A stretch of DNA of 64,000 nt, taken from the IMG/VR virus record IMGVR_UViG_3300033388_007730, positions 124,001 through 188,000 of that record; one strand, given 5' to 3'. Positions within the stretch are counted from its first letter, which is position 1; every line of letters begins with the position of its first letter. The notes beneath the pieces are model-generated. The model ran no database searches. It was not told the DNA's origin and was given only the letters and a program-made list of their open reading frames with translations. Positions 14,419 through 61,076 of this stretch are shown here, in pieces. The position numbers were made by a program, and so were the translations under genes.

Positions 14419-14447
14419 TTGAAAGTGAATTGCATTTATGTTATAAT
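14419..14447 (+). promoter_or_regulatory. AAAGTGA-box promoter
   Basis: TTGAAAGTGAATTGCATTTATGTTATAAT: -35, 17 nt, TG-n-TATAAT. Confidence 0.75.
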
Positions 14448-14482
14448 CTCTGTAATGGTATTTATATTTGTGAGATAAGAAA

Positions 14483-15373
14483 ATGAAAGCAGAAGAACAA
14501 TTAAAACTTTTAGTTAATGAGCCTGATTTCCTTTCAAAGTCTGGAAGTAGATTGTACGGAACGAGTACGCCTACATCAGATTATGATTTAAGAGGGTTTG
14601 TGTTGCCTCCATATGAGTACCTCGTTGGGCTGAAAACATTCAATGATATGGAACTCGAAGGTGATCATAAGGTTTATAGCGTAAAGAGATATTTGGAATT
14701 GGTGCTTCGTGGAGATCCGCAATGCACAGAGCTTTTGTTCGCAGATTATGATAGTATTGAATACATAAGTTCTGTTGGTGAAATTATCATGTCATTAAAA
14801 GATGATCTTGTTAGCAACGTTATTTATAATCGTATCATGGGATATAGCATTGGCGAATGGAGAAAAGCTATGGCTATTCGTTTAGTTTCTGTTGAACGAA
14901 ATAAGACTAAGAAAGAAATCATAAATGATGTGCGTAATCATTGGAAGCTTGATAAAGAAAAAATGGATAGCATTATAAAGATTTTTGATTCTGTAGATGA
15001 AAAGAAATGCATTTCTTCTATGGCTGGTCTTGGAGTGAAGAGGAAGAAAGAAGTTGAAGAGCATGGCTATTGCAGAAAAAGTGCGACTCATTCTATTCGC
15101 CTGGTTACTCAACTTACTGAACTTCTGCTCACTGGTAATATTATTTTTCCTAGACCCAATGCTGATTTTCTTCTTGACATTAGACATGGAAAATATAGTA
15201 AAGATGAATTAGAAGAAATTCACAATGAAGTTGATGCTATAGCTAAAGAAGCAAAAGAAAAATCTGTTCTTCCAGAAAAGCCTAATTCTGGTAAGGTATG
15301 GAAAGTGTATGAAAAAATCGTTGTAGATTTTTTGAATAAAGATGAAAGATTTAATAATTTAATTGGAGAGTAA
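14483..15373 (+). CDS. Pol-beta superfamily nucleotidyltransferase (YcgL/RlaP-like)
   Basis: SGSRLYGTSTPTSDYDLRG, HSIRL, LLDIRHG. Confidence 0.8.
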   Translation: MKAEEQLKLLVNEPDFLSKSGSRLYGTSTPTSDYDLRGFVLPPYEYLVGLKTFNDMELEGDHKVYSVKRYLELVLRGDPQCTELLFADYDSIEYISSVGEIIMSLKDDLVSNVIYNRIMGYSIGEWRKAMAIRLVSVERNKTKKEIINDVRNHWKLDKEKMDSIIKIFDSVDEKKCISSMAGLGVKRKKEVEEHGYCRKSATHSIRLVTQLTELLLTGNIIFPRPNADFLLDIRHGKYSKDELEEIHNEVDAIAKEAKEKSVLPEKPNSGKVWKVYEKIVVDFLNKDERFNNLIGE

Positions 15374-15374
15374 G

Positions 15375-15818
15375 ATGGCAAAGAACGGTAACAAAGGCAT
15401 GAAGAAGTATGAAGAAATCTTGAAAAAGATTTGTAATGTAGAAGATTTGCACTATCTAAGAGGTCCAGAGTGGGAAGGATGTCTTGGAGTTGCGATAGTC
15501 CTTGCCTTTATGGAAGGAGTCCCTGCCAATATACAGGCGATAGCCAGGTATTTGGATGTGTCTTCTTATAACCAAAGTTTAGTTTCTGCTTTTAGCCGTT
15601 TGAAGGTTAATGACATCTTTAATAAAGAATATGGTGTTAGAGAAGATGCTTCTCTGAAAGGGAAAGCAATTATTTCTCCTCAGCCTAAATTCATAACTCC
15701 GCAACATATGTCAGATTTAGACTGGTGTCATCTTGCAGGAATTGCTGGTGGATTTTCTGGCATTAGAATAGAGGAGAGGAAGAAGACAGAGGAAGTAGAA
15801 ACTGCTGGAAAAGAATAA
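15375..15818 (+). CDS. Hypothetical protein
   Basis: GGAGAG RBS then ATG 15375. Confidence 0.6.
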   Translation: MAKNGNKGMKKYEEILKKICNVEDLHYLRGPEWEGCLGVAIVLAFMEGVPANIQAIARYLDVSSYNQSLVSAFSRLKVNDIFNKEYGVREDASLKGKAIISPQPKFITPQHMSDLDWCHLAGIAGGFSGIRIEERKKTEEVETAGKE

Positions 15819-15993
15819 AGTGTGTAGATACGATCCATAAATTGTTATGCCAGGTTGTTAGCGGCCCTATAAGGGCTTAAAATCCTATAACAGGTGGATA
15901 GAGAGAACCATCTGGCGAGGCGTATGAGGTGGAGAATCGGGAATCCTCAATTTTATTCTTTTCATTTTTATTAAAAATATGGAGGAGGAGATT

Positions 15994-16518
15994 ATGTCAA
16001 AAGATATCATAGGTTTTTATAAGGGTGCAGCAACAAGTCAAAAAGGACTTTATGTATCAGATGTCGATGATATGACAAATGAGCAATTAGAGTCAGATTG
16101 TTATTATATTCAGTGGATTTTTCCTTTGCCAGAAGCTAGTAAAGCTGTTCCTGATACTCCTATTTTGCGGCAAGCTGATATAAATGAATTTCGTGAATCC
16201 TATGAGTTAAGAGGGGCTATGCTCAAAATGGCTCTAAAAATGTTTGATTTTTATGGGTTTAAAGTGAGAGATGGAGAATCAACAGGGAAGATAGTAAAAG
16301 CAGATAATTTTGATGAAAGATCTAAAGAATGGTTGACATCTCGCAATCATAATTTTCTTCGTTTAACTCGTATAGTCAGGTCTACGAAGCTTTTAGGATT
16401 AGAGGGTTTAGCTAAAAATTTCTATAATTGTTTATGCGAAATCTATGAAGAGAATAAGGGAATAGTAGGTCCATATACTAAACAATTCTGGGATGAAGCT
16501 ATTGAAAAAGATGTGTAA
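15994..16518 (+). CDS. Opioid growth factor receptor (OGFr) N-domain-like protein
   Basis: YIQWIFPLPEAS, MFDFYG, NHNFLRLTRI. Confidence 0.8.
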   Translation: MSKDIIGFYKGAATSQKGLYVSDVDDMTNEQLESDCYYIQWIFPLPEASKAVPDTPILRQADINEFRESYELRGAMLKMALKMFDFYGFKVRDGESTGKIVKADNFDERSKEWLTSRNHNFLRLTRIVRSTKLLGLEGLAKNFYNCLCEIYEENKGIVGPYTKQFWDEAIEKDV

Positions 16519-16535
16519 AAGATTTTATTTTATCA

Positions 16536-16564
16536 TTGAAAAGTGAAAGACAATATGATAAAAT
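16536..16564 (+). promoter_or_regulatory. AAAGTGA-box promoter
   Basis: TTGAAAAGTGAAAGACAATATGATAAAAT. Confidence 0.75.
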
Positions 16565-16573
16565 TATTAACTA

Positions 16574-16607
16574 TATTAATTTTATTTCATTATTAATTTT
16601 ATTTCAT
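16574..16607 (+). repeat. 17-bp tandem duplication TATTAATTTTATTTCAT x2 in a 5' leader
   Basis: Read directly, between the promoter and the RBS. Confidence 0.8.
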
Positions 16608-16624
16608 TTTCTTAGGAGAAAATT

Positions 16625-16837
16625 ATGAAGGTGACAAAAAGAGGTACAAACGTAAAAAGACACACTACTCATTATCTTGTTGGTGGTAAATGGAGAACTC
16701 GTAAAGAGTCTGTAAAGCTTGCCAAAGAAGGTAGAATTAATGGAGTGACAGTTTGTCGAGGAGAATATGGAGAATACATTCAATCACTACCATCTGCTAC
16801 CATAAAGCTATATGATATGCCAGAGGTAGTGAGATAA
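16625..16837 (+). CDS. Small basic protein (DUF3892-like)
   Basis: Strong RBS; pattern THYLV...TRKESV...YIQSLP...LYDMPE. Confidence 0.55.
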   Translation: MKVTKRGTNVKRHTTHYLVGGKWRTRKESVKLAKEGRINGVTVCRGEYGEYIQSLPSATIKLYDMPEVVR

Positions 16838-16868
16838 TTATTCGTTCTTTGTAATACGTTTCTAAGTT

Positions 16869-16901: not shown

Positions 16902-16939
16902 TCTAATTTAAGAGGGGGCATAGATTTTTCAATAAAAAT

Positions 16940-17012: not shown

Positions 17013-17840
17013 GTGATTAAAGAAGATATTGAAAAATTAACAGTTAGGACACAAGTCACCAGGATATGTGATGAGTGTGGGAAAAAAGATAAATTAACAA
17101 TCCATACAATTTTATGTTCTAAAATTAGAAGAAAAACGGGCAAGGATTACTGTAAGAAATGTAGTTATAAGTTTAGAGAACATAACCAAAAAATAGGAAG
17201 TGCATCTCCGTATTGGAAGGGTGGAGTAAGTATTAACCCGACTAGTGGTTATTTAAGAATAAATAAAACAAAAGAGTATTTACATAAATATATTTATGGA
17301 GAATTTGTTGGAAGAAAAATTTCTAAAACAGAAAAAATTCACCATATAGATTTAGATAAATTGAATAATAATGTAGATAATTTATATTTATGTGAGAATA
17401 AAAGTTGTCATTCTAAAGTTCATAGTCAAATGGAAGAACTTGGCTATATCTTATTAGGCGAGTATATTTGGTTTTCTAGAGAAAAACATAAATATGTATT
17501 AGATAAAATTATAGAAAATAATATAATTTTCGAGGTAAAAGGTAAACCAACTTGTATTTTAAAAGATCATAATGGAAAAAGATATGCTTCGATATATATA
17601 GGATACAGAAAACATCAGAGATATCACAGGTATCTTATGGAGAGATTTTTAAATAGAAAATTAATGAAAAATGAACATGTTCATCATATTGATGGAGAAA
17701 TATTAAATAATGATATTAATAATCTTATAGTTGTGAGCAAATCTAATCATAAATATGTTCACAATTCTTTACAAAAATGTATTTCTGAGTTATATAAAAC
17801 AAATATGGTTAAATTTGAGAAGGGAATTTATTATGTTTAA
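17013..17840 (+). CDS. Free-standing HNH homing endonuclease with two HNH domains
   Basis: CDECG/CKKC zinc motif, YWKGG, IHHIDLDKLNNNVDNL and VHHIDGEILNNDINNL. Confidence 0.85.
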   Translation: MIKEDIEKLTVRTQVTRICDECGKKDKLTIHTILCSKIRRKTGKDYCKKCSYKFREHNQKIGSASPYWKGGVSINPTSGYLRINKTKEYLHKYIYGEFVGRKISKTEKIHHIDLDKLNNNVDNLYLCENKSCHSKVHSQMEELGYILLGEYIWFSREKHKYVLDKIIENNIIFEVKGKPTCILKDHNGKRYASIYIGYRKHQRYHRYLMERFLNRKLMKNEHVHHIDGEILNNDINNLIVVSKSNHKYVHNSLQKCISELYKTNMVKFEKGIYYV

Positions 17841-19842
17841 ATATTTATTTATAATAGAATCTCCTGGAAAACAGAAAAAAATACAATCTTTTTTGGGGAA
17901 GGATTTTTTAGTAATCCCTACATACGGGCATATAATGGATCTTCATCCAAAAAAAATAAGTGTTGATATTAAGAATGATTTTAAGCCTGCTTATGAAATT
18001 AATTCTGATAAAAAAGAAGTAGTTAAAAATATAAAAGGAAAAGCTAAAAAAGCAGAAATAGTTTATATAGCTACTGATTTAGACAGAGAAGGCAGTTTAA
18101 TTGCTAATGGAGTGGCTTCTATCCTTCCTAAAGAAACTGCTTATAAAAGAGTTAAATATAATGCGATAACTAAAAAAGATATTTTAAATGGTATTGAAAA
18201 TGCAGGAGAAATAGACGCTAAATTGGTACATAGTGCAGAATGTAGGCGTATACTTGATAGACTTGTTGGATGGAAATGCAGTTTCTTAACTAAACAAGCT
18301 ACTGGAGGATCATCTGCTGGTAGAGTTCAAAGTGCTGCTCTGAGAATCTTAGCAGAGAGAGAAAAAGAAATAAGAGATTTTGTGCCACAAGAATATTGGC
18401 CAATTGAAGTAACTCTTGAAAGAGAAAATGGTGAAACAGTTATAGCTAATATCAAGAAACCAAAACCTCTTGATATCAAAACAGAAAAAGATTCAAAAAC
18501 TATTTGTGATATATTAAAGAAAAGTGACTGGATAGTTTCTAAATATGAAACAAAAGAAAAATTTACAAGAGCATATGCTCCATTTACAACTTCTACATTA
18601 TATCAATCAGCATCATCTATCTTAGGATGGAGTTCATCTAAAGCATCTTCGGTAGCACAACAATTATATGAGTCTGGTGCTATAACATATATAAGAAGCG
18701 ATTCAACATATATTGTTCCAGATTTTGTAAGTACGATGAGAGATACAGCAGGAGTAAAATATGGGCAAAATTATGTTTCTTCTAAAGTTAATTTTTTCGC
18801 AAATAAAAAAGGTGCTCAACAAGCTCATGAAGCTATTCGAGTTACTGATGTAAATGCGGAGAATTGTGGTACTGGTGATGGGAATAGACTGTATAAGATA
18901 ATATGGAAAAGAACAATAGCATCTCAAATGGAGAAGTTGAAACAACTGGCTGGTTTAGCAGAGTTCAAGTGTAATAAGTATTTGTTTGGGGCTACAGGTA
19001 GTAAGGTTCTTTTTGATGGGTTCAGAAAGTGTTGGGATTATGGATCTTTAACAGATTCTGAGTTGCCAGAGTTTGAAGTTGGAGAGGAATTAAAATGTAT
19101 TGATGTGAAGACAGAACAAAAATTTACTGCTCCTCCACCTCATTATACAGAGTCATCAATCGTAAAAGAACTTGAGAAGAGAGGAATTGGAAGACCTAGT
19201 ACATTCGCATCTATTCCTGCAACTTTGCTGAAACGTAATTATATAGAAAAGAAGAAGAATACAATTTATACTACTGATATAGGGATAGGAGTTTCTGACT
19301 TCTTAGTTGAATCTGATTTCTGTTTTGTTAATTTGGATTTTACAGCAACACTTGAAACGGATTTAGATTGTATTGCTACTGGTGACTGTTGCAAGTTAGA
19401 TATTCTTAATGAGTTCTGGTGTAGATTAAAACATGATATAAATAATGCTAAGAATATTAGAGAATCTAAGTCTAAGACAGATTATGTTTGTAAAAAATGC
19501 GGTGGTTTTTTGATGTTAAAACACAGTAAATATGGTCCGTTTTTGACATGCGAGAATAGAACTAATAAAGATGCTCCTTGTGATTATAAGTGTGATGTAG
19601 GCGAGGGTGGAGTTCCAGTAGAGAAGAAGAAAAAAGAAAAGAATTATTCAACTGAGTATAAGTGCCCCAATTGTGATTCTTATTTATTGATTAGGACTAA
19701 TAAAAAAGGTGGTTTGTATCTTGGTTGTGAGAATTGGCAGCAGCCATCCTGCAAAGGATTCTATAATGCAGAAACTGGAGATAAAATAGCATTCAAGAAG
19801 AAAAAATATAAAAAATGGGGAAAAAAGAAGAAAAATGACTAG
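17833..19842 (+). CDS. topA: DNA topoisomerase IA with C-terminal zinc ribbons
   Basis: IESPGK, ATDLDREG, SAGRVQS, ITYIRSDS (catalytic Tyr), AHEAIR, GIGRPST, CKKCG/CPNCD. Confidence 0.95.
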   Translation: MFKYLFIIESPGKQKKIQSFLGKDFLVIPTYGHIMDLHPKKISVDIKNDFKPAYEINSDKKEVVKNIKGKAKKAEIVYIATDLDREGSLIANGVASILPKETAYKRVKYNAITKKDILNGIENAGEIDAKLVHSAECRRILDRLVGWKCSFLTKQATGGSSAGRVQSAALRILAEREKEIRDFVPQEYWPIEVTLERENGETVIANIKKPKPLDIKTEKDSKTICDILKKSDWIVSKYETKEKFTRAYAPFTTSTLYQSASSILGWSSSKASSVAQQLYESGAITYIRSDSTYIVPDFVSTMRDTAGVKYGQNYVSSKVNFFANKKGAQQAHEAIRVTDVNAENCGTGDGNRLYKIIWKRTIASQMEKLKQLAGLAEFKCNKYLFGATGSKVLFDGFRKCWDYGSLTDSELPEFEVGEELKCIDVKTEQKFTAPPPHYTESSIVKELEKRGIGRPSTFASIPATLLKRNYIEKKKNTIYTTDIGIGVSDFLVESDFCFVNLDFTATLETDLDCIATGDCCKLDILNEFWCRLKHDINNAKNIRESKSKTDYVCKKCGGFLMLKHSKYGPFLTCENRTNKDAPCDYKCDVGEGGVPVEKKKKEKNYSTEYKCPNCDSYLLIRTNKKGGLYLGCENWQQPSCKGFYNAETGDKIAFKKKKYKKWGKKKKND

Positions 19843-20278
19843 GAAAAATGAAGTTGTAAAATGTGGTGGGCATTGTTATGATGGCTGTGGGTGGCAAAGT
19901 TGTTATTTTTGGGATAGGGGAAGTACAAAGGACCCAAAATGTAGATGTTTATTATTTGGAGGGATAGACGGAGTAAAAAAATGCATGTCAAGATCTATTC
20001 CACAATGCAATAAAGTTTTTGGGACAGATTGTGAAAAGGTAATAGAAACATACGAGAAAAAACCAGGAGTAATAGTATCAAGAGGAGAGAAGTATCATGG
20101 TGAGTGGGTAGTGATGATTGATTTTAATAATACCACTGTAATAGCTCATGATAAGGATAGAGAAAAAGCGGTAGAAAAGGCTGGAAAGGTGGGCGTTCCA
20201 ATTGTTGGTAAGGTTGGGGATAATAAGAATCAAGGAGTACTTTTATATATGCCAAAAAAAATGTTTCAAAGTGATTAA
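19835..20278 (+). CDS. Hypothetical Cys-rich protein
   Basis: Coupled to the topA stop; multi-Cys N-terminal half. Confidence 0.6.
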   Translation: MTRKNEVVKCGGHCYDGCGWQSCYFWDRGSTKDPKCRCLLFGGIDGVKKCMSRSIPQCNKVFGTDCEKVIETYEKKPGVIVSRGEKYHGEWVVMIDFNNTTVIAHDKDREKAVEKAGKVGVPIVGKVGDNKNQGVLLYMPKKMFQSD

Positions 20279-20292
20279 CAAAATGTTATAAT
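20264..20292 (+). promoter_or_regulatory. AAAGTGA-box promoter
   Basis: TTTCAAAGTGATTAACAAAATGTTATAAT. Confidence 0.7.
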
Positions 20293-21040: not shown

Positions 21041-21069
21041 TTGTAAAGTGAAAGATATTTTAGTATAAT
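21041..21069 (+). promoter_or_regulatory. AAAGTGA-box promoter
   Basis: TTGTAAAGTGAAAGATATTTTAGTATAAT. Confidence 0.7.
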
Positions 21070-21545: not shown

Positions 21546-21546
21546 T

Positions 21547-22237: not shown

Positions 22238-22951
22238 ATGGAAGATACTATTATTATAGGAATGTCTGGTAAGAAACAATCTGGTAAAACTCTTTCTTGC
22301 GAAGATATTCAGAGAAAATATGGTCTATCACAATCTGCCAATTATCCTGTTACAACTATTTCTGCTACAGTAGCTCTATATAGTTTTGCTGATATGCTTA
22401 AACAAAAAGTATGTATGGATACTATGGGATTAACATATGAGCAATGTAATGGAACTAATGAACAAAAGAGCACTCCTACCAAATATAAATGGGAAAATTT
22501 ACCACGACAGATAAGATATGATAATAAATTGGGATCTAAATATGCATCTAATGGAGAAGTGTATCAACACATCTTACCAGAAGGATTTATGACTGCTAGA
22601 GAGATTTTACAGATAGTTGGGACAGACATATTTAGAAAGTATTTTGATGATGATATTTGGGTGAATGCTACTTTCAGAAAAATAGAGAAAGAGAAACCTA
22701 AAGTAGCAATTATTACAGATGCCAGGTTTCCAGGTGAGATCGACGCAATAATGAATAATGGTGGTTGTGTAATTCGTCTGTTAAGAGATGTCTGCGAAAG
22801 TGATTTTCATGAAAGTGAAACAGCATTAGATGATTATGATTTTACAAAGTGGGGAAATAGAGTTTGTATTATTGATAATCAACATATGAGTATAGAAGAA
22901 AAAAATGTTGTTGTATTTAAGTATCTAGAGGGAATAATCAAATGTCAATAA
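22238..22951 (+). CDS. Deoxynucleoside monophosphate kinase (phage type)
   Basis: SGKKQSGKT, SFADMLK, TAREILQIVGTD, IITDARF, HESE. Confidence 0.85.
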   Translation: MEDTIIIGMSGKKQSGKTLSCEDIQRKYGLSQSANYPVTTISATVALYSFADMLKQKVCMDTMGLTYEQCNGTNEQKSTPTKYKWENLPRQIRYDNKLGSKYASNGEVYQHILPEGFMTAREILQIVGTDIFRKYFDDDIWVNATFRKIEKEKPKVAIITDARFPGEIDAIMNNGGCVIRLLRDVCESDFHESETALDDYDFTKWGNRVCIIDNQHMSIEEKNVVVFKYLEGIIKCQ

Positions 22952-25647: not shown

Positions 25648-25654
25648 AGATTAT

Positions 25655-25682
25655 TAAACACTTTTTTGATATGTGTCGATAT
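25655..25682 (+). promoter_or_regulatory. Candidate sigma28/SigD-like promoter upstream of the sigH-like gene
   Basis: TAAA-N16-GTCGATAT versus consensus TAAA-N15/16-GCCGATAW. Confidence 0.45.
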
Positions 25683-25714
25683 AAATAACGCAATATGACA
25701 CATGCGAAAGGAGT

Positions 25715-26434
25715 GTGAATATGGATAAATCCAAGAATGATGGAAAAATCAGTAACTTGGATTATCAGGGTTTAGTAGATATAGTGAGAAGTGGCAGAAA
25801 TAAGAAGCAGAATCAAGCATATAATGAAATAGAAAATAGGATAAGACCAAAGATATATTTTATTATAAGGCAATTTTATATACCAGGATGTAATTATGAT
25901 GATATTTTACAAGAGGCATTATTCGCTTTAAGATATAAAGCTATTCCGGATTATGATGGTAGTCGTGGCAGAGGCGATACCATTTATCCATTTGATAATT
26001 TTGCAGTTCTTTGTATAAGAAGACATTTATCTACATTATTGAAATCTAGCTTCCAAAATAAAAGAAAAGCACTAAATACAAGTTTGTCCTTAGACCAAGA
26101 TAGAAATAATGTTTCAGATGATAGTTTATTTTTATCAGATATAATTCCGAGAACGGAAGGTAGTGTCGTAGGTGATTTGGGAGAAAAAGAATATTATCAA
26201 AAACTATTTAGCAGCTTATACGCAGAGTTGTCTATATTAGAGAAAAGAGTATTTAGTTTATATTCTAAAAGATATTCTTATGGTGAAATTTCTATAAAGA
26301 TAAATAAATATTACAGGAAAAATAAGATAAAGAAAAAGACGAATATTAAATCCATAGATAATGCTCTTTCGAGGATAAAACAAAAAGCAAAAGAAGTTTA
26401 TGAGAGATATGGATTAGAGGAAGAGAATGAGTAA
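25715..26434 (+). CDS. Sigma-70 family factor, SigH/Spo0H-like
   Basis: DDILQEA, FAVLCIRRHL, ALNTSLSLD, LSILEKRV, SYGEIS, KSIDNALSRIKQK. Confidence 0.85.
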   Translation: MNMDKSKNDGKISNLDYQGLVDIVRSGRNKKQNQAYNEIENRIRPKIYFIIRQFYIPGCNYDDILQEALFALRYKAIPDYDGSRGRGDTIYPFDNFAVLCIRRHLSTLLKSSFQNKRKALNTSLSLDQDRNNVSDDSLFLSDIIPRTEGSVVGDLGEKEYYQKLFSSLYAELSILEKRVFSLYSKRYSYGEISIKINKYYRKNKIKKKTNIKSIDNALSRIKQKAKEVYERYGLEEENE

Positions 26435-26501
26435 TAAAATTAGAGAAGATCTTCACTCATCCTGTAAAAAATAATATGTAGTTGTAATAATTAGGTGACG
26501 T

Positions 26502-27404
26502 ATGAACAAAGTAGCATTTTTATTTCCTGGACAGGGATCTCAATTCATTGGTATGGCAGAAGATAGTTATCTGTATGATACTGCAAATGATATATTGGGA
26601 TATGATATAAAAGACATATGTAATAATGGTCCTTTAGAAAAACTCAATTCTACTATAGTTTCACAACCTGCTATATTCATCGCTTCTGCTGTAATGTTAG
26701 AAATATTTGATACGATGATGCCAGAAATTTTCCCCTCTTTTGTGGCTGGATTAAGTTTAGGAGAATATACTGCTTTATATGCCGCAGGAGTGATAAATTT
26801 TGAGACTGGTCTTATGTTAGTTCAGGAAAGAGCAGAGTGGATGCAAGGAGCAGTTGATCGTTCAAAAGGTGGTATGGTTAGTATCATAGGATTAGATGAA
26901 GAAAAAGTTAGAGAATTGTGTAAAGTGGCAGCAGAAGATGAGTATTTAACATTAGCTATTTTCAATTGTCCATCTCAAATAGTTATTAGTGGAGATATTG
27001 TGGCTTGCTATCGTGTTGTATTATTAGCTAAAGAGTGTGGAGCTATCAAAGCTATTAAATTAGATGTTGCGGGAGCTTTTCATTCAAAAATGATGAGATA
27101 TGCTGTCAGTGGATTAAAAGATGTTTTGTGGCATCACATAGATCAAGATTATCAAATTCCTTCTGATGTAAAAATAATATCTAATGTAGATGCTGAGTAT
27201 TATGTTGATGATAATAACATCAGGAATAATCTTGCTGTTCAACTTATTCAACCTATTTTGTGGCAAAAGTGTATGGAGAGATTAATTAGAGATGGAGCAG
27301 ATGAATTTTATGAAATAGGACCAGGGAGAACTCTTACGGGATTAATGAAGAGAATAGACAGAAAACAAAAAATATTTCATGTTTTAGATGTATTAAAAAA
27401 ATAG
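26502..27404 (+). CDS. fabD: Malonyl-CoA:ACP transacylase
   Basis: FLFPGQGSQ, SQPAI, AGLSLGEY (catalytic Ser), GAFHS, EIGPG. Confidence 0.93.
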   Translation: MNKVAFLFPGQGSQFIGMAEDSYLYDTANDILGYDIKDICNNGPLEKLNSTIVSQPAIFIASAVMLEIFDTMMPEIFPSFVAGLSLGEYTALYAAGVINFETGLMLVQERAEWMQGAVDRSKGGMVSIIGLDEEKVRELCKVAAEDEYLTLAIFNCPSQIVISGDIVACYRVVLLAKECGAIKAIKLDVAGAFHSKMMRYAVSGLKDVLWHHIDQDYQIPSDVKIISNVDAEYYVDDNNIRNNLAVQLIQPILWQKCMERLIRDGADEFYEIGPGRTLTGLMKRIDRKQKIFHVLDVLKK

Positions 27405-27415
27405 GAGAATTAAAG

Positions 27416-27493
27416 ATGGTAACAATATTTAATTCAATAGCAATAATATTATTGTGTATTGCTCCTTATACTCATCTTAATAATAATCATTGA
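27416..27493 (+). CDS. Possible 25-aa hydrophobic peptide
   Basis: AGGAG then MVTIFNSIAIILLCIAPYTHLNNNH*. Confidence 0.3.
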   Translation: MVTIFNSIAIILLCIAPYTHLNNNH

Positions 27494-27518
27494 AAAGTGA
27501 AAAGCAATATGCTATAAT
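27490..27518 (+). promoter_or_regulatory. AAAGTGA-box promoter
   Basis: TTGAAAAGTGAAAAGCAATATGCTATAAT. Confidence 0.8.
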
Positions 27519-27557
27519 AAGTAATGTAAATAAAGTTGAAATATAGGAGATGAAGTA

Positions 27558-30006: not shown

Positions 30007-30244
30007 AAATGTAGGTAATTTAATGATGGCTGTGGCAAAAATCCCCGATATTTGCTCAGAATTCCAGAAAACACCGTCTGACGAGAATGGTGAAAAAATT
30101 ATTGAAATAATTGAAGAATCTGAAAAAAAACTATTGACAATTAAGAAGAATATTGTTATAATAGTCAATGACATGAAGGAAGAAGAAAGCTTCAGTGTAG
30201 AAGCAACACTTTCAAATAATGGTTTTATTATTAAGAATGAATAG
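29990..30244 (+). CDS. Hypothetical protein
   Basis: GAGG RBS, 84-aa ORF. Confidence 0.5.
   Translation: MTSLAENVGNLMMAVAKIPDICSEFQKTPSDENGEKIIEIIEESEKKLLTIKKNIVIIVNDMKEEESFSVEATLSNNGFIIKNE
30134..30162 (+). promoter_or_regulatory. Consensus sigma70 promoter without the AAAGTGA box
   Basis: TTGACA-N17-TATAAT with extended TG. Confidence 0.7.
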
Positions 30245-42879: not shown

Positions 42880-42907
42880 TTGAAAGTGATTATGAATATG
42901 GTATATT
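42880..42907 (+). promoter_or_regulatory. AAAGTGA-box promoter
   Basis: TTGAAAGTGATTATGAATATGGTATATT. Confidence 0.65.
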
Positions 42908-45138: not shown

Positions 45139-45142
45139 TTAT

Positions 45143-45185
45143 AATATCCCCCAACATTCATTGTGATATTGGGGGATATTTTTTT
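45143..45185. terminator. Probable bidirectional terminator between convergent genes
   Basis: AATATCCCCCAA / TTGGGGGATATT stem followed by a T-tract. Confidence 0.75.
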
Positions 45186-45597: not shown

Positions 45598-45607
45598 TTT
45601 ACTCTCA

Positions 45608-46154: not shown

Positions 46155-46183
46155 TGGAAAAGTGAAAAATAATATGGTAAAAT
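46155..46183 (+). promoter_or_regulatory. AAAGTGA-box promoter
   Basis: TGGAAAAGTGAAAAATAATATGGTAAAAT. Confidence 0.7.
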
Positions 46184-47132: not shown

Positions 47133-48221
47133 ATGAAAATATTAGATTTTTCTAATAGTCGTAGAAGTTTTTTAATGTCCAAAAGAATGCCTGCTAAAGA
47201 TTATTTTTTCTTTTTAAACGGAGAGAAAATGAATTTTTTTAGAGAAAGGGAATCTCATGTTGAAGATATTAAATATTTTTGTCCAGAAATCCTTAAGAAC
47301 AAAATAAATACAATGAATGAAATAGAGAGACATTCTGATGCTGATATTTTGTTATTAAACGATATGACAATTATAAATAAAAAACATAGTAATGATATAG
47401 TTAATTTTTTAAATAAATTTAAAGGCAAAATAGTTGCTATAGGTTATTCTTGGGATTTTGTTATTGATTGCCCTCAAAATAATAATCAACTAAAAAGAGA
47501 AATCGATGCTCTAGCCGTAGCTGGTCCATCTTCTTTATGTAAAGTGCAAGCATTTCCTTATAGCCAATCAGAATTAGATGTTCTGCATAGAGATGTCAAC
47601 AATGTTTTTGTAAATAAAAATGATGTTATAAAAAAATATAAATTGCCTAGTAATAAAAAATATGTATTAATAACAGTTGCATTTCAGAGAGAACATGAAA
47701 ATTATCTTAAAGATCTTAGACTATTTGAAAAAAAAATAGTGAAATTCATTAAATATATAAAAAATTATGATAACATTTATACTATATGGAAGATAAAAGA
47801 AAAACAAAAAGATTTTGTTAAAATTGTAAAAATTATTTTAAAAAGTCAAAAATTTGATAATTTTTTTGTATTCTCAAATGTTTACGATGACGGGTATGAA
47901 AGGTGGCATCGTCGTTTTATTTCTCCAATTAATGAATTATCTTCTGTGATATCTTGTCATATTAATTTATCTTCAATATCTTTTTCACATATAGAAATAG
48001 CAGTTGCTGGCATACCAACTTATTCTTTTAATGGAGATAATGTTGAAATGCCTTATAATCCAGAATGTATTAAAGACATGTTTAATACATTTTGGGATAA
48101 AAAGTCTATTAGCAATTGTTATGGAAATAAAGATATTTGTATAGATAGGTCTTTAATAATGCCTATTATTGATAGAAATTTTTTCACTGACAACCTAATA
48201 AAAAATCTATTGACATTATAG
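47133..48221 (+). CDS. Hypothetical protein, possibly GT-B fold
   Basis: 362-aa very AT-rich ORF; SHIEIAVAGIP resembles EA...G.P. Confidence 0.45.
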   Translation: MKILDFSNSRRSFLMSKRMPAKDYFFFLNGEKMNFFRERESHVEDIKYFCPEILKNKINTMNEIERHSDADILLLNDMTIINKKHSNDIVNFLNKFKGKIVAIGYSWDFVIDCPQNNNQLKREIDALAVAGPSSLCKVQAFPYSQSELDVLHRDVNNVFVNKNDVIKKYKLPSNKKYVLITVAFQREHENYLKDLRLFEKKIVKFIKYIKNYDNIYTIWKIKEKQKDFVKIVKIILKSQKFDNFFVFSNVYDDGYERWHRRFISPINELSSVISCHINLSSISFSHIEIAVAGIPTYSFNGDNVEMPYNPECIKDMFNTFWDKKSISNCYGNKDICIDRSLIMPIIDRNFFTDNLIKNLLTL

Positions 48222-48237
48222 AAATATGTGGTATAAT
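48210..48237 (+). promoter_or_regulatory. Sigma70 promoter, probably giving a leaderless transcript
   Basis: TTGACA-N16-TATAAT ending 7 nt before ATG 48245; no RBS. Confidence 0.65.
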
Positions 48238-49512: not shown

Positions 49513-50559
49513 ATGTTACTTACAAGAGAACAATTTAGAAATGGAGTACTTGAGAGAGATAACAATCAGTGTGTTATCTGCGGAAGCTCTACAGATCTTG
49601 TGGCACATCACATTATGGAGAGAAGATTATTTGAAGATGGTGGATACTACATTTCAAATGGTAGCACACTCTGCGAAGAACATCATATTCTTGCTGAGCA
49701 AACTGTTTTGTCTTGTGAAGAGATTAGAGAAGCAGCAGGAATTACAGATATTGTTTTACCTCCTCATCTGTATCAAGATACTAAGTATGAAAAATGGAGT
49801 AACATCATACTCTCTGATGGTCGTAGGTTAAAAGGTGAGTTGTTCTTTGATGAGTCTGTTCAGAAGATACTTAAAGCAGGCGATGTATTAAAGCATTTTT
49901 GCAAATATGTCAAATATCCAAGAACCTGGCATCTCTCACACAGTCATAAGGTTCATCGTAATGATATGCAGTTAGATTCTAATAAACAGTTTAATGGCAA
50001 GAAAGTAGTAGTCACTATTAAGATGGATGGTGAAAACACCACAATGTATAATAACTATCTTCATGCTCGTTCAGTTGATAGTGCTAATCACCCTACAAGA
50101 GGTTGGGTTAAAAGAATACATGCTGAGATGGGATGGAATATTCCTGAAGGTTGGAGAGTCTGTGCTGAGAATATGTATGCTAAACACACTGTTGAATATG
50201 AGAACCTTGAATCTTATCTTCTTGTTTTTTCTATATGGAATGAAAAGAATGAGTGTTTGTCATGGGATGATACTATTGAATGGGCAGAACTGTTAGAACT
50301 TTCTATGACTCCTGTTCTTTATGTGGGAGAATGGGATGAAAAAAAGATTCATTCTTTATGCCCAAAAGAATATAATGGAGATAAAGTTGAAGGATATGTG
50401 GTCCGTTTATTTGAATCTTTTACATATGGGGATTTCAGAAAATCAGTAGCCAAATATGTGAAGCCAGAATTTGCAGATCAACTCGGAACTGGGAGCAGCC
50501 ACTGGAAGTATAAAAAGATAATTCCCAACAAATTACAAAAGAAAGTTGTTGAAAAGTGA
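49513..50559 (+). CDS. HNH domain fused to an ATP-dependent RNA ligase
   Basis: RDNNQCVICG..AHHI..NGSTLCEEHH; KYPRTWHL, KMDGEN (motif I), CAEN, EGYVVR, AKYV. Confidence 0.85.
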   Translation: MLLTREQFRNGVLERDNNQCVICGSSTDLVAHHIMERRLFEDGGYYISNGSTLCEEHHILAEQTVLSCEEIREAAGITDIVLPPHLYQDTKYEKWSNIILSDGRRLKGELFFDESVQKILKAGDVLKHFCKYVKYPRTWHLSHSHKVHRNDMQLDSNKQFNGKKVVVTIKMDGENTTMYNNYLHARSVDSANHPTRGWVKRIHAEMGWNIPEGWRVCAENMYAKHTVEYENLESYLLVFSIWNEKNECLSWDDTIEWAELLELSMTPVLYVGEWDEKKIHSLCPKEYNGDKVEGYVVRLFESFTYGDFRKSVAKYVKPEFADQLGTGSSHWKYKKIIPNKLQKKVVEK

Positions 50560-50577
50560 TTAAAGCTATGTTAGAAT
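50549..50577 (+). promoter_or_regulatory. AAAGTGA-box promoter overlapping a gene junction
   Basis: TTGAAAAGTGATTAAAGCTATGTTAGAAT. Confidence 0.55.
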
Positions 50578-52728: not shown

Positions 52729-52757
52729 TTTCAAAGTGAAAGATAATTATGTATAAT
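52729..52757 (+). promoter_or_regulatory. AAAGTGA-box promoter
   Basis: TTTCAAAGTGAAAGATAATTATGTATAAT. Confidence 0.7.
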
Positions 52758-52797: not shown

Positions 52798-53271
52798 ATG
52801 ATGAATTACAATCGGGTTATGTTGATGGGCAGACTCACTGCCAATCCAATTCTCAGGGTTTTTGATGACGGTAATAAAGTTGTGAACTTTTCTATCGCTA
52901 CTAATAGAACTTGGAAGGGTGCTGATAACCAAAGAAGAGAAGAAACGTGTTTTGTGGCTTGCAAGGCTTTTGGAACAAGAGCACAGGCAATTAACGACTA
53001 TTTCTCAAAGGGAAGACCTTTATTTATTGAGGGTCATCTTTACCAGGAAAAGTGGGTAAATAAGGATACTCAAAAAAATATGACTAAGTTGCGTGTAGTA
53101 GTCGATAATTTTGAATTTCTTGATAAGAAGAGTTCAACAGAAGATGGAATTCCAGCATCTGCTGGTAATTCGTTTATGTCTGGTTCCGCAGATGATTTTG
53201 ATGCTGTTGTAGATGATGCTGTTACTACAGAAGTTACTTCTACTAACAAAGATGTTGCTGACAGGAGTTAA
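52798..53271 (+). CDS. ssb: Single-stranded DNA-binding protein
   Basis: NRVMLMGRLTANP, FSIATNR, KGRPLFIEG; acidic tail without the usual IPF end. Confidence 0.92.
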   Translation: MMNYNRVMLMGRLTANPILRVFDDGNKVVNFSIATNRTWKGADNQRREETCFVACKAFGTRAQAINDYFSKGRPLFIEGHLYQEKWVNKDTQKNMTKLRVVVDNFEFLDKKSSTEDGIPASAGNSFMSGSADDFDAVVDDAVTTEVTSTNKDVADRS

Positions 53272-54925: not shown

Positions 54926-55759
54926 ATGATTTATAGTAGAATATGCCCTCAGTGTAAAAAAGAAATAAAATATAAACACAAGGGGACTTGGAAGAGATTA
55001 GAGAAAAAGGGGTCTTTTTGTTTTAATTGTACTCGTAAAAATTTATGTAAGACAGATGAACAAAAAAAACAGATGGCTTCTCATTTTGGAGAACCTCGTA
55101 GAGGAAGGGATAATCCTTTTTATGGGAAAAAGCATTCTGATAAAACTAAGGCTATTTTAGCGAAAAAGTGCAGGAGGGTCGGGAAAGAGTGCGGGATGTA
55201 TGGTAGATCTTTTTATGATATTTGGTTGGAAAAATATGGTAAAAAAGAAGCTAATAAAAAGATGGTTGAATTTAAAAAGAAACAGTCAATACTTCATTCT
55301 GGTAAAAATAATCCTATGTATGGCAAACCTTCTCCTCAAGGATCTGGGAACGGTTGGAGTGGATGGTATAAAGGATGGTACTTTAGGAGTTTGAGAGAAT
55401 TATCTTATGTCATAAATTATTTAGAAAAGAATAATTTAGAATGGATATCTGCTGAGAAGAAAAAGTTTTCAATACCATACAAAGATTATGATGGAACAGA
55501 GAGAACTTACCGTCCTGATTTTTTTGTTGAAAATAGCATATTAGTAGAAATTAAACCCAACAGATTAAAAAAAGCTGTAACAAATAATTTAAAAAAAGCG
55601 GCAGCAGAAAAATTTTGTAAAAAAAATAATTATAAATATGAAGTGGTAGAACCTAAGAGAATGAAAGATAAGCAAATAGCCGATTTGTATAAGAAAAAGA
55701 AGATAAAATTTTTAGATAGATATGAGAAAAAATTTAAAGAAAGATATTTAAATGAGTAA
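54926..55759 (+). CDS. NUMOD3-containing homing endonuclease with a TnsA-like PD-(D/E)xK domain
   Basis: CPQC/CFNC, NPFYGKKHS, NNPMYGK, FRSLRE, TYRPDF...LVEIKP. Confidence 0.8.
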   Translation: MIYSRICPQCKKEIKYKHKGTWKRLEKKGSFCFNCTRKNLCKTDEQKKQMASHFGEPRRGRDNPFYGKKHSDKTKAILAKKCRRVGKECGMYGRSFYDIWLEKYGKKEANKKMVEFKKKQSILHSGKNNPMYGKPSPQGSGNGWSGWYKGWYFRSLRELSYVINYLEKNNLEWISAEKKKFSIPYKDYDGTERTYRPDFFVENSILVEIKPNRLKKAVTNNLKKAAAEKFCKKNNYKYEVVEPKRMKDKQIADLYKKKKIKFLDRYEKKFKERYLNE

Positions 55760-59568: not shown

Positions 59569-59576
59569 AAAAAGTG

Positions 59577-59604
59577 TTGATATTTGTATTTTTTCTGCTA
59601 TAAT
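59577..59604 (+). promoter_or_regulatory. Sigma70-like promoter for the tmRNA
   Basis: TTGATA-N16-TATAAT with TG-n extension. Confidence 0.55.
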
Positions 59605-59629
59605 ACGATAGTTCTTATAAAATTAAATA

Positions 59630-60011
59630 GGGGACGACAGGATTGACTGGATAGGTAGAAAATTGAATTGCATGTCAGAGATGGTAGTTGGCTCTGTAAA
59701 AAATCTACTAAAAAGTTTAATTGCAAACAGTTACGCAATGGCTGCTTAAGCAGCAGGAGGGTGGCATAGCCTACCTTCCACCGATGTCTGTAAGGGAGTT
59801 TCCTGCTGGAACTTACAGGCTAATTTAGGCAGGATAGCCGAGAAACATTTTCTCATGGTGTGATTGGCGACAAGTCCCGATAAGGGGATGAGATAGCGAA
59901 AGTTAGGGTTAGTCCGTTGTTCCTAACATAGTGAAAAAAAAACAACGGACTATACATGTAGATGTTTGATTTGAAATATCACAGGACGAGGCTTCAATGC
60001 CTCCGTCTCCA
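59630..60011 (+). ncRNA. ssrA: tmRNA; tag (A)ANSYAMAA at 59723-59749
   Basis: 5' GGGGACG pairs with 3' CGTCTCC-A with G3:U; T-arm GAGGC-TTCAAT-GCCTC; GCATGT/ACATGT helix; resume codon GCA; tag ends AA*. Confidence 0.92.
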
Positions 60012-60041
60012 TTATGATGAAGTTTTTTTAAGGATGTAATA

Positions 60042-60392
60042 ATGAGTAGAGTAGGATTATTAGTAATATTGTTTTTGACTTCTTTTCTCTTTTGTGGTTG
60101 TGATAAACCAGAACCAAGACCAAGACCGAAATTCGGTAAAGGTCAAAAAGTTATTCATAGAGCTACAAGTAAAGAGTGTTATGTAATTAACTCTACTTAT
60201 GATTATACCGAATCAGTTGGATGGACTTGTGCTGTATATTCTTATATGACATAAGAAGAGATTGAGACATTGGAAAAGTCTGTTACTGGTATTACTAAAA
60301 AATGTAATGTTGAAGCTGGACAAATACAATTGTGTGAACATGTTTATAAAAGTATGTTAGAACCTACAGAAGATGATTATAGAAAGGATTAA
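60042..60392 (+). pseudogene. Lipoprotein-like ORF with an in-frame TAA at 60252-60254
   Basis: Hydrophobic signal with a lipobox-like FCGC; the frame stays open 45 codons past the TAA, up to the next gene. Confidence 0.5.
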
Positions 60393-60394
60393 AA

Positions 60395-60565
60395 ATGAAA
60401 GCATATGGACGTAAAAATCCTATAAGGGATGGAGCAAGGAAGAATAGAAAACATTCTCGTAGAGGGAATGTTTGTTCTGTATGTAATAACACTAAAATTA
60501 GTAAAGGAAGTGCTAGGCAGAAAATGAAAAATATATTAGCAAATGGAGATATCGATTTCCTGTGA
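60395..60565 (+). CDS. Small basic CxxC protein (56 aa)
   Basis: AAGGA RBS; MKAYGRK...CSVC...KGSARQ. Confidence 0.55.
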   Translation: MKAYGRKNPIRDGARKNRKHSRRGNVCSVCNNTKISKGSARQKMKNILANGDIDFL

Positions 60566-60594
60566 TTTACTAACTAATTTATAGGAGACTGATA

Positions 60595-60966
60595 ATGAGT
60601 AGAACGTATCGAAGAGATGCAGTTGTATTAGACTGTAATTGTGGCGCACCTGTAGGATCTCATTGGAGATTTTTTTGGAGACCAGGATCTATTACTCCTA
60701 ATAGGGAAATAGATATAGAACTTAGAAGATCTCGTAGTAGAGGATTACCACCAGATAGAATGTGTCATTGTTGGACTAATAAACAATATGATTTTTATTC
60801 TAAAAGAAATTACAAGAGAGATCATAAATCTTGGCGTAAATGTAACAGAACTTGGAAAAAGATTTATCAAAAGAAACGTAGAGCCAGGATTAGAGCAGCA
60901 ATGAGTCATAAGGATTATGAGAATATTCCTAAATTCAGAAAGGAAAATGACTGGAATTGGATTTAA
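60595..60966 (+). CDS. Arg/Lys/Trp-rich hypothetical protein
   Basis: AGGAG RBS; MSRTYRR...RRARIRAAM...WNWI. Confidence 0.6.
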   Translation: MSRTYRRDAVVLDCNCGAPVGSHWRFFWRPGSITPNREIDIELRRSRSRGLPPDRMCHCWTNKQYDFYSKRNYKRDHKSWRKCNRTWKKIYQKKRRARIRAAMSHKDYENIPKFRKENDWNWI

Positions 60967-60988
60967 TTTTCACCCTTCTCTAGTCCCC

Positions 60989-61023
60989 TGCCTCTCATCT
61001 CTTGTAGATGGGAGGCATTTTTT
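60989..61023 (+). terminator. Rho-independent terminator
   Basis: TGCCTCTCATCT-CTTGT-AGATGGGAGGCA followed by T6. Confidence 0.85.
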
Positions 61024-61047
61024 ATTTATAAATTTTATGTTTTTTAG

Positions 61048-61076
61048 TTGAAAGTGATTATTTTTTATGGTATAAT
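61048..61076 (+). promoter_or_regulatory. AAAGTGA-box promoter, probably leaderless
   Basis: TTGAAAGTGATTATTTTTTATGGTATAAT ending 6 nt before ATG 61083. Confidence 0.75.

What the first reader, a model, noticed from the sequence alone, without database searches (positions are those of the whole stretch)
14419..61076. Ten promoters share an AAAGTGA box 12-13 nt upstream of the -10 element
Seen: AAAGTGA followed by 12 nt (8 cases) or 13 nt (2 cases) and a TAnAnT -10 box, at promoters starting 14419, 16536, 20264, 21041, 27490, 42880, 46155, 50549, 52729 and 61048. The nominal -35 hexamer varies (TTGAAA, TTTCAA, TTGTAA, TGGAAA) while the box is invariant. Promoters at 30134, 48210 and 59577 lack it. 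Downstream genes include dnaN, ssb, thyX, nucleotide enzymes and the sigma pair. Known: T4 middle promoters use a MotA box at about this distance from a sigma70 -10. Inference: a distinct promoter class read by host RNA polymerase plus a phage activator or repressor, or by a phage sigma. The tandem XRE protein (62300) and the sigmas at 61083/61693, which sit behind one such promoter, are candidates.
Basis: partly seen in the sequence, partly recalled or inferred. Interest (0 to 1): 0.75.

Follow-up and report, generated by a model that had tools for sequence, protein, structure and literature searches.

The report
Conserved AAGTGA-box promoters of huge phages
The ten sites are real promoters of a distinct class, shared by a small clade of uncultivated huge phages, in which a normal host-type -10 element is paired with an invariant AAGTGA box 12 bases upstream; the geometry copies phage T4's activator-dependent middle promoters, but the protein that reads the box is unknown.

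Summary
Observation confirmed. AAAGTGA-N12/13-TAnAnT occurs 11 times in the window against 0.45 expected. The eleventh, at 13927, lies in coding sequence.

The window is part of a 219-kb fragment of an uncultivated huge phage, with about 20 such promoters, all on the coding strand. Four related phage contigs of 298-548 kb carry 17-36 each, against 2-3 in controls. At 13 of 20 sites the box promoter also sits in front of the orthologous gene in a relative.

The core AAGTGA is all-or-none. It is fixed 12 nt (±1) from the -10, while an upstream TTG slides by one base. The -10 half is primary-sigma type (TRTGnTATAAT), as in the canonical TTGACA promoters of the same genome.

Box promoters drive replication and nucleotide genes and every phage sigma gene except the pair in G004.

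Best reading (about 0.45): host primary-sigma polymerase plus a conserved, unidentified box-binding factor. This works like T4 MotA middle promoters, but no MotA or AsiA homologue is present.

A conserved SigH-like sigma is also unlikely.

The host is unknown and no transcript data could be listed.

The parts
14419..14447 (+). Box promoter: TTG, box 14422-14428, 13-nt spacer, -10 TATAAT 14442-14447. Drives the RlaP-type nucleotidyltransferase gene (14483-15373).
   Evidence: A box promoter also precedes the ortholog in G003 and G004.
16536..16564 (+). Box promoter: TTGA + AAAGTGA 16540-16546, N12, TAAAAT 16559-16564. Drives a 70-aa gene and then the gene at 17755-19842 (family phrog_13226).
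   Evidence: A box promoter also precedes the ortholog in G002 and G004. A close relative, L374, has topoisomerase domains at the syntenic position.
20264..20292 (+). Box promoter without TTG (TTTC + AAAGTGA 20268-20274, N12, TATAAT). Drives the 183-aa nucleoside deoxyribosyltransferase-like gene.
21041..21069 (+). Box promoter (TTGT + AAAGTGA 21045-21051, N12, TATAAT). Heads an operon: metallopeptidase-like gene, dNMP kinase, the 901-aa gene at 22942-25647 (its ortholog in a close relative is a 370-aa clamp-loader-like protein) and the SigH-like sigma.
   Evidence: A box promoter precedes the ortholog in G002, G003 and G004.
27490..27518 (+). Box promoter (TTGA + AAAGTGA 27494-27500, N12, TATAAT). 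Drives the DnaN-like clamp gene (27558-28823).
   Evidence: A box promoter precedes the ortholog in G002, G004, L374 and L378.
42880..42907 (+). Box promoter (TTTG + AAAGTGA 42883-42889, N12, TATATT). Drives the genes at 43004-43873 and 43936-45138.
   Evidence: A box promoter precedes the ortholog in G003 and G004.
46155..46183 (+). Box promoter (TGGA + AAAGTGA 46159-46165, N12, TAAAAT). Drives thyX (46227-47117).
   Evidence: A box promoter precedes the ortholog in G003.
50549..50577 (+). Box promoter (TTGA + AAAGTGA 50553-50559, N12, TAGAAT) at the end of the RNA ligase gene. Drives an 81-aa gene and the NT5C-like gene.
52729..52757 (+). Box promoter without TTG (TTTC + AAAGTGA 52733-52739, N12, TATAAT). 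Drives ssb (52798-53271).
   Evidence: A box promoter precedes the ortholog in G003 and G004.
61048..61076 (+). Box promoter (TTG + AAAGTGA 61051-61057, N13, TATAAT). Drives the tandem sigma pair, the XRE protein and a NUDIX gene.
   Evidence: A box promoter sits directly upstream of the sigma homologue in G001, G002 and G003.
30134..30162 (+). Canonical promoter without box: TTGACA-N17-TATAAT with TGn and an A-tract upstream.
48210..48237 (+). Canonical promoter without box: TTGACA-N16-TATAAT with TGn.
59577..59604 (+). Canonical promoter without box (TTGATA-N16-TATAAT). Drives the phage tmRNA.
25721..26434 (+).
61083..62298 (+). Tandem pair of sigma-70-family proteins of about 200 aa (61083-61700, 61693-62298). 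They are products of a box promoter and unlikely to be its readers.
62285..63031 (+). HTH_3 (XRE-type) protein. Poorly conserved in the clade and unlikely to read the box.

Best explanation
The sites are genuine promoters of one class used by a clade of uncultivated huge phages, probably of Firmicutes-like hosts. The downstream half (TRTGnTATAAT) is read by the host primary sigma factor on host core polymerase, as at the canonical TTGACA promoters of the same genome. The invariant AAGTGA at -30 to -25 is set at a fixed distance from the -10. It abuts a weak, sliding TTG. It is most likely the docking site of a conserved, clade-specific protein that works in a fixed register with the polymerase, more likely as an activator or co-recognition factor than as a plain repressor. 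The class switches on replication and nucleotide-metabolism genes and the phage's own sigma genes. It therefore sits near the top of a multi-sigma cascade. Functionally it resembles T4 MotA-dependent middle promoters, without homology to them. What is shown: the motif, its spacing, its conservation and the genes it precedes. What is inferred: the host sigma as reader of the -10, and the existence of a box-binding factor.
For: Enrichment and strand bias: 11 matches against 0.45 expected in the window; 19 exact matches genome-wide, all on the + strand; 17-36 per related genome against 2-3 for the backwards control. De novo check: anchoring on TATAAT, the commonest upstream 6-mer at a fixed offset in all four genomes is AAGTGA at spacer 12, tied in G000 and second to the overlapping TTGAAA in G002 and G003. 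All-or-none core: at intergenic TA[TA]AAT sites there are 49 exact boxes against 16 with one mismatch, 8 of those only at the first A, with background 2 and 7. TTGACA in contrast shows 22 exact against 76 with one mismatch. Spacing peaks at 12, while TTG occupies -35..-33 or -34..-32 about equally. The spacer is otherwise variable, so these are not recent duplicates. Thirteen of 20 G000 box promoters have a box promoter before the ortholog in at least one genome whose proteins are only 30-65% identical. The extended -10 (T-17, R-16, T-15, G-14) is shared with the canonical class and rare in class-3 promoters. The sigma genes examined lie downstream of box promoters: the pair in G000-G003, the FliA-like gene in G003 and G004, and the SigH-like gene within a box-headed operon. 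Something present before any phage sigma is made must therefore read them. In a distant relative (L377) the orthologous promoters are canonical TTGACA-N17-TGcTATAAT or extended -10, so box promoters are positional equivalents of primary-sigma promoters. Five cultured large Firmicutes phages show no enrichment, so the box is not a generic feature of such promoters. The geometry equals that of the T4 MotA box, 12 +/- 1 bp from the -10 (PMC2988021).
Against: No box-binding protein was identified. Pfam scans of 20 conserved small proteins gave no DNA-binding candidate. There is no MotA or AsiA homologue. TTG is retained in about two thirds to three quarters of sites, and with TGn these promoters should work with primary sigma alone, so a factor may not be needed for activity. 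There are no transcript data. The host is unknown, so a host-specific polymerase contact cannot be excluded. G000 is only about 44% complete.
Confidence: 0.45

Rival explanations
1. Host primary sigma alone. The box promoters are simply the clade's early promoters (TTGAAA -35 plus extended -10). AAGTGA would be an extra contact for the host polymerase, or a lineage-specific optimisation, with no dedicated factor.
For: TTG at 16/17-bp spacing in most sites and a TRTGnTATAAT -10. Position at the top of the sigma cascade. The orthologous promoters are canonical in the relative L377. No factor was found.
Against: No known primary-sigma contact reads bases at -28 to -25 (own knowledge). The box is stricter than the -35 TTG itself, and it forces A where sigma prefers C (TTGAAA, never TTGACA). 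Canonical promoters without the box coexist in the same genomes. Five cultured Firmicutes phages, including SPO1 with its many primary-sigma early promoters, lack the box.
Confidence: 0.25
2. The box is an operator for a phage repressor that shuts these early or middle promoters off later in infection. Activity itself needs only host primary sigma.
For: The same evidence as for sigma alone, plus the all-or-none conservation that implies a sequence-specific binder.
Against: A repressor needs no fixed register with the -10, yet the spacing is 12 +/- 1. The site is a short asymmetric 6-7-mer in one orientation only, unlike typical dimeric operators.
Confidence: 0.13
3. A phage sigma reads the box as its -35 element. 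The best candidate is the conserved SigH-family sigma (window 25721-26434), with host sigma giving only a basal start (positive feedback).
For: The protein is 58-65% identical in four genomes, and the predicted 4.2 helix KS(I/V)DNALSR(I/V/M)K is invariant, also in 117 of 120 homologues. It belongs to the SigH family (3mzy E 3e-8; spore_sigH E 7e-20). The known -35 of that family, RWAGGAXXT (own knowledge), resembles AAAGTGAWW and lies at short spacing.
Against: The -10 is TATAAT with TRTG, not the family's GAAT hallmark (own knowledge). The geometry is 2-3 bp shorter than SigH promoters. The gene itself lies in a box-driven operon. A relative with the same helix (L377, 49% identity) has canonical promoters without the box at the orthologous positions, including the operon that holds this sigma. 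The GTCGATA element upstream of the gene in nine of the ten relatives examined (not found in L377) suggests a different cognate promoter type.
Confidence: 0.12
4. The first reader's candidates, the tandem sigma pair or the XRE protein encoded behind the promoter at 61051, read the box.
For: They are encoded directly behind a box promoter in G000-G003. Both sigmas have a region 4.
Against: The recognition helices differ in every phage while the box is identical. G004 has 36 box sites but only very divergent pair homologues, placed under a class-3 promoter. G001 and G002 show a single member. The XRE protein has one 26% homologue only.
Confidence: 0.05

Closest known systems
Phage T4 middle promoters (MotA box plus AsiA-remodelled sigma-70; sigma appropriation)
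   Same: An asymmetric box centred near -30 lies 12 +/- 1 bp upstream of an excellent sigma-70-type -10, often with TGn. The promoters drive replication and nucleotide genes and the next tier of transcription factors. They coexist with canonical early promoters (PMC2988021; PMC6755090).
   Different: The box sequence is AAAGTGA, not (a/t)3TGCTTtA. The core tolerates no substitution, whereas MotA boxes tolerate many. A -35-like TTG is mostly retained. No MotA (MotCF) or AsiA homologue is present. The phage lineage is unrelated and the host is probably Gram-positive.
Canonical primary-sigma promoters of Gram-positive bacteria and their phages (TTGACA-N17-TRTGnTATAAT)
   Same: The -10 is TATAAT, with a TRTG-type extended -10 and TTG at 16/17-bp spacing in most sites.
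   Different: An invariant AAGTGA occupies -30..-25. A replaces the consensus C of the -35. The box, not the TTG, is in fixed register with the -10. Canonical promoters without the box occur alongside.
SigH-type promoters (RWAGGAXXT-N14-HGAAT in Bacillus; own knowledge)
   Same: A purine-rich AAAG..GA upstream element and short spacing. A SigH-family sigma is encoded by the phage.
   Different: AGTGA instead of AGGA. The -10 is TATAAT, not GAAT. The geometry is 2-3 bp shorter. A relative with the same sigma helix lacks the box at the orthologous promoters.
Sigma cascades of Bacillus phage SPO1 (gp28, then gp33/gp34)
   Same: Host-sigma promoters drive phage sigma genes that redirect host core polymerase in later tiers. 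A tandem pair of small sigma-like proteins is present (own knowledge).
   Different: There is no match to the SPO1 consensus sequences. At least three sigma types are present (the tandem pair, SigH-like, FliA-like) and at least three to four promoter classes.

Membership tests
T4 MotA/AsiA sigma-appropriation middle promoters | Activator box centred about -30, 12 +/- 1 bp upstream of a sigma-70-type -10 | tested here: met
   The box occupies -31..-25 and the spacing peaks at 12. The T4 geometry is taken from PMC2988021.
T4 MotA/AsiA sigma-appropriation middle promoters | Box sequence (a/t)(a/t)(a/t)TGCTTtA | tested here: not met
   The box here is AAAGTGA.
T4 MotA/AsiA sigma-appropriation middle promoters | MotA homologue (DNA-binding MotCF domain, PF09158) | tested here: not met
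   No hit at E <= 1 in G000-G004, two of which are complete genomes. The activation domain PF09114 was not searched.
T4 MotA/AsiA sigma-appropriation middle promoters | AsiA homologue (PF09010) | tested here: not met
   No hit at E <= 1 in G000-G004.
T4 MotA/AsiA sigma-appropriation middle promoters | The box replaces the -35 element | tested here: inconclusive
   TTG is retained in about two thirds to three quarters of sites, but it slides by 1 bp and is absent from some sites, for example 20268 and 52733.
T4 MotA/AsiA sigma-appropriation middle promoters | Transcription depends on the activator and on a remodelled sigma | not testable with these tools
   No sequencing runs were listed. Biochemistry is needed.
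Canonical primary-sigma (sigma-70/sigma-A) promoter | -10 TATAAT, with or without the extended TGn/TRTG | tested here: met
   Position weight matrix: T-12, A-11 and T-7 fixed by the search pattern, A-9 and A-8 at 78%, T-17 64%, T-15 54%, G-14 42%.
Canonical primary-sigma (sigma-70/sigma-A) promoter | -35 TTGACA at 17 +/- 1 bp as the main upstream determinant | tested here: not met
   The upstream information peaks at GTGA (-28..-25). The -35-like hexamer is TTGAAA at 16 or 17 bp, or is missing.
SigH-type promoter | -35 RWAGGAXXT and -10 HGAAT about 14 bp apart (own knowledge) | tested here: not met
   AGTGA replaces AGGA, the -10 is TATAAT and the spacing is 2-3 bp shorter. The few strict SigH-type matches are separate sites and are not conserved at orthologs.
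Sigma-28/FliA-type promoter | TAAA(GTTT)-N11-GCCGATAA (own knowledge) | tested here: not met
   The -10 of box promoters lacks CGA. Separate GTCGATA(T/A) sites exist elsewhere, for example upstream of the SigH-like gene.

The most novel reading that the evidence does not exclude
A non-homologous counterpart of T4 sigma appropriation in huge phages of Gram-positive-type hosts. An unknown, conserved phage protein would bind the asymmetric AAGTGA box at -30..-25, next to or in place of sigma region 4. It would redirect host primary-sigma polymerase to about 20-40 phage promoters at the head of a cascade of three further phage sigma types.
Probability: 0.35. Interest if true: 0.8.

Novelty: new variant of a known kind. 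Interest (0 to 1): 0.62.

Why it matters
Huge phages are known almost only from metagenomes, and their gene-expression programmes are essentially unmapped. This clade shows a readable programme from sequence alone. It has canonical host-type promoters, a strict box class for replication genes and sigma genes, a third class in front of dozens of small genes, and three types of phage sigma factor. If the box is read by a new factor acting with the host polymerase, it would be only the second known case of a promoter architecture so far unique to T4, reached by unrelated proteins. It would also give a compact, portable regulatory part. Even if host sigma suffices, the motif is a practical marker for annotating promoters and operons in this phage group.

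Tried and rejected
- A home-made Gibbs sampler on intergenic regions, with box sites masked, returned only AT-rich noise and ribosome-binding sites. K-mer enrichment worked better.
- No close DNA or sigma relatives exist among cultured phages. IMG/VR holds only four close relatives.
- Literature searches for the motif found nothing relevant.
- Sequencing runs for mapping transcript starts: none was listed in two attempts.
- Host identification failed:
  - the phage carries no tRNAs;
  - the nearest bacterial ThyX homologues are Phycisphaerae and Ignavibacteria at about 50% identity, which is uninformative;
  - five such MAGs show no motif enrichment;
  - relatives cannot be drawn for a virus record;
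  - loci from the look-up of encoding contigs cannot serve as handles.
- A class of SigH-type promoters (AAAGGAWWW-N11/12-RNNGAAT) looked promising in G004 but is not conserved at orthologs, so it remains weak.
- The AlphaFold model of the SigH-like sigma was of low confidence (pLDDT 54), so no fold search was made.
- Enriched repeats such as CCAGTTCT and GTTAGTAG turned out to be tandem serine-rich repeat DNA, not promoters.
- A test for compensation between TTG and TGn was confounded by false positives.

Full report
**The observation**

The pattern AAAGTGA-N12/13-TAnAnT occurs 11 times in the window, always on the + strand. The expectation from 100 dinucleotide-preserving shuffles is 0.45, with a maximum of 3. 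The eleventh (13927) lies inside a lysine-rich coding stretch, has no TTG, and is probably chance.

The 7-mer alone is not enriched (28 against 20), so the signal is the pairing with a -10 element.

**Context**

The window is bases 124001-188000 of a 219,188-bp virus record. The record has 31.6% G+C, about 95% of its genes lie on one strand, and CheckV puts its completeness at about 44%. It has no close cultured relative.

Genome-wide there are 19 exact matches, none on the minus strand, and about 20 intergenic promoter-like sites once -10 variants and one CAAGTGA are allowed. AAAGTGA and GTATAAT are among the most intergenic-enriched 7-mers that are not plain A/T runs.

**The class is shared by a phage clade**

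An exact-pattern scan of IMG/VR found four contigs with several hits each. Whole-record scans of these contigs (298, 351, 461 and 548 kb) gave 17-36 sites each, against 2-3 for the pattern read backwards.

These phages are collinear relatives of the window's genome. Of 271 predicted proteins, 91 have homologues in all three relatives that were analysed in full, at 30-80% identity.

Anchoring only on TATAAT, the commonest upstream 6-mer at a fixed offset in all four genomes is AAGTGA at spacer 12. It is tied in G000 and second to the overlapping TTGAAA in G002 and G003. Spacing histograms peak sharply at 12.

Thirteen of the 20 promoters in the window's genome have a box promoter in front of the orthologous gene in at least one other genome. 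These genes include the RlaP-type nucleotidyltransferase, the DnaN-like clamp, ThyX, SSB, a UvrD-like helicase and the sigma gene. The rest of each promoter region has diverged. This is strong evidence of function.

**Anatomy**

Counting the first base of the -10 as -12:

- The box AAGTGA occupies -30 to -25, preceded by A at -31 in 90% of sites.
- T-35 and T-34 are at 74-83%. The G of TTG is at -33 in about half the sites and at -32 in the other half, so the -35-like TTGAAA slides by one base while the box keeps its register with the -10.
- The spacer carries little information apart from a preference for AAG or TT(A/T) after the box, so these are not recent duplications.
- The -10 side shows T-17, R-16, T-15 and G-14. 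This is the TRTG extended -10 typical of Gram-positive primary-sigma promoters (own knowledge), and it also occurs in the canonical class.

An unbiased count was made at intergenic TA[TA]AAT sites. It found 49 exact boxes and only 16 one-mismatch variants, eight of which differ only at the first A. The background was 2 and 7. TTGACA in contrast shows 22 exact and 76 one-mismatch sites. The core is therefore all-or-none, stricter than the -35 itself, and it imposes A where primary sigma prefers C.

**Other promoter classes and sigma factors**

The same genomes carry three other kinds of promoter:

- About ten canonical promoters per genome. Here they drive a phage tmRNA (Rfam, 108 bits, window 59630-60014), a Ro60-like Rsr protein and a QueE-like gene.
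- A very abundant third class. Its upstream element is TTCCAGAC in G002 and G003 and (T/C)GCCAGAGTG in G004 and G000, followed by an A/T tract and a TAGnnT-like -10 19-20 nt downstream. It stands in front of dozens of small genes: about 75 sites in G004, and four at the truncated end of the window's genome.
- A GTCGATA(T/A) element upstream of the SigH-like gene in nine of the ten relatives examined. It was not found in L377.

The phages encode at least three types of sigma factor:

- The tandem pair in the window.
- A conserved SigH-family sigma at window 25721-26434.
- A FliA/WhiG-family sigma, seen in the two complete genomes.

**Who reads the box**

*The tandem pair and the XRE protein are poor candidates.* The predicted recognition helices of the pair differ in every phage, although the box is identical. 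G004 has 36 box sites but only very divergent pair homologues, and these sit behind a class-3 promoter. The XRE protein has a single 26% homologue.

*The SigH-like sigma is a better candidate on conservation.* It is 58-65% identical across the genomes, and the helix KS(I/V)DNALSR(I/V/M)K is invariant, also in 117 of 120 homologues. Its family's -35 (RWAGGAXXT, own knowledge) resembles AAAGTGAWW. Several points count against it:

- The -10 of box promoters is TATAAT with TRTG, not GAAT.
- The geometry is 2-3 bp too short.
- The gene lies inside a box-driven operon.
- In a more distant relative with the same helix (L377, 49% identity), the orthologous promoters are canonical or extended -10 without a box. 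This includes the one heading the operon that contains this sigma.

Box promoters are thus positional equivalents of primary-sigma promoters.

*Position in the cascade.* All the sigma genes examined lie behind box promoters, except the divergent pair in G004, which is behind a class-3 promoter. The class must therefore be readable before any phage sigma exists. This points to host primary-sigma polymerase for the -10 half.

*The box itself.* An all-or-none, asymmetric 6-mer is held at 12 +/- 1 bp from the -10 across phages whose proteins have diverged to 30-60% identity. This calls for a sequence-specific reader in fixed register with the polymerase. No known primary-sigma contact covers -28 to -25 (own knowledge). 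Five cultured large Firmicutes phages lack the motif. I therefore favour a conserved, still unidentified phage factor, at confidence about 0.45.

**Comparison with known systems**

The architecture is that of T4 middle promoters. There, a MotA box is centred at -30, 12 +/- 1 bp from a stringent -10; half the promoters carry TGn; and they drive replication genes (PMC2988021). Membership fails, however:

- The box sequence differs.
- The core is far less tolerant of change.
- TTG is mostly kept.
- Neither MotCF nor AsiA domains occur in any of the five genomes, two of which are complete.

The finding is best filed as a new variant of a known kind of phage promoter logic.

**Limits**

- The host is unknown. 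Hints point to Firmicutes: strong Shine-Dalgarno sequences; SigH-like, SpoVS and receiver-only response regulators; and nearest cultured DnaE relatives in Moorella and Bacillus phages.
- No transcript data could be listed.
- Gene calls are my own crude ones.
- The genome is a fragment.

Noticed in passing
window 59630-60014 (+): A phage-encoded tmRNA (Rfam RF00023, 108 bits) is transcribed from the canonical promoter at 59577. ARAGORN missed it. The tag reading frame appears to end ...ANSYAMAA.
   Followed up: partly
G000 207049, 207647, 214388, 217036 (outside the window); G002, G003 and G004 genome-wide: A third, very abundant promoter-like class: TTCCAGAC or (T/C)GCCAGAGTG, then an A/T tract, then TAGnnT about 19-20 nt downstream. 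It stands in front of dozens of small genes (about 75 sites in G004). Its upstream element differs between phages, and its reader is unknown.
   Followed up: partly
window 25675-25690, and upstream of the orthologous gene in nine of the ten relatives examined (not found in L377): A conserved ATGTCGATATAAATA / GTCGATA(T/A) element lies 35-130 nt upstream of the SigH-like sigma gene, even in relatives at 41-57% identity. It could be a FliA-type or an autoregulatory -10.
   Followed up: partly
window 22942-28823, and L374, L376-L380: In most relatives examined the SigH-like sigma gene follows a clamp-loader-like gene (DNA_pol3_delta2), with the DnaN-like clamp gene downstream after zero to five further genes where the contig extends. 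This recalls the clamp-coupled late transcription of T4. In the window the clamp-loader ortholog is 901 aa against 370 aa in a close relative, apparently through an insertion; its tblastn hits fall on terminase and DNA polymerase genes, some annotated with inteins.
   Followed up: no
window 45184-46081 (-): Two receiver-only response-regulator proteins (137 and 157 aa) lie on the minus strand and are conserved in all four genomes (45-57% identity). A further cREC_REC receiver lies at G000 92824-93192.
   Followed up: no
G000 55214-55648, 76524-76847, 91716-92228, 205248-206987: Host-like accessory genes: an IF3 homologue, a SpoVS homologue, a NADAR domain protein, and a Ro60-like Rsr RNA-binding protein behind a canonical promoter that is conserved in three genomes. 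Together with the tmRNA, RNA ligase, RlaP and a CCA-adding-type enzyme they suggest an RNA-repair theme.
   Followed up: no
G000 78984-81962 and 66666-71152: The UvrD-like helicase (992 aa) carries an intein. The DnaE-like DNA polymerase is split into two ORFs with an intervening gene.
   Followed up: no
G004 1-1500 and 458800-459500; G003 (reverse-complemented coordinates) 491300-492300: Long tandem arrays of serine-codon-rich repeats (AGTTCT/AGCTCT units) lie at the terminal repeat of G004 and inside G003. They inflate k-mer statistics.
   Followed up: no
G003 original coordinates 44614-45459 (-); G004 47262-48107 (+): A FliA/WhiG-family sigma factor of 281 aa occurs in the two complete genomes, preceded by a box or box-like promoter. 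It was not seen in the fragments G000-G002.
   Followed up: partly
window 13927-13951: An eleventh match to the search pattern (AAAGTGA-N12-TACAAT) lies inside a Lys-rich coding region, with no TTG upstream. It is probably a chance match rather than a promoter.
   Followed up: partly
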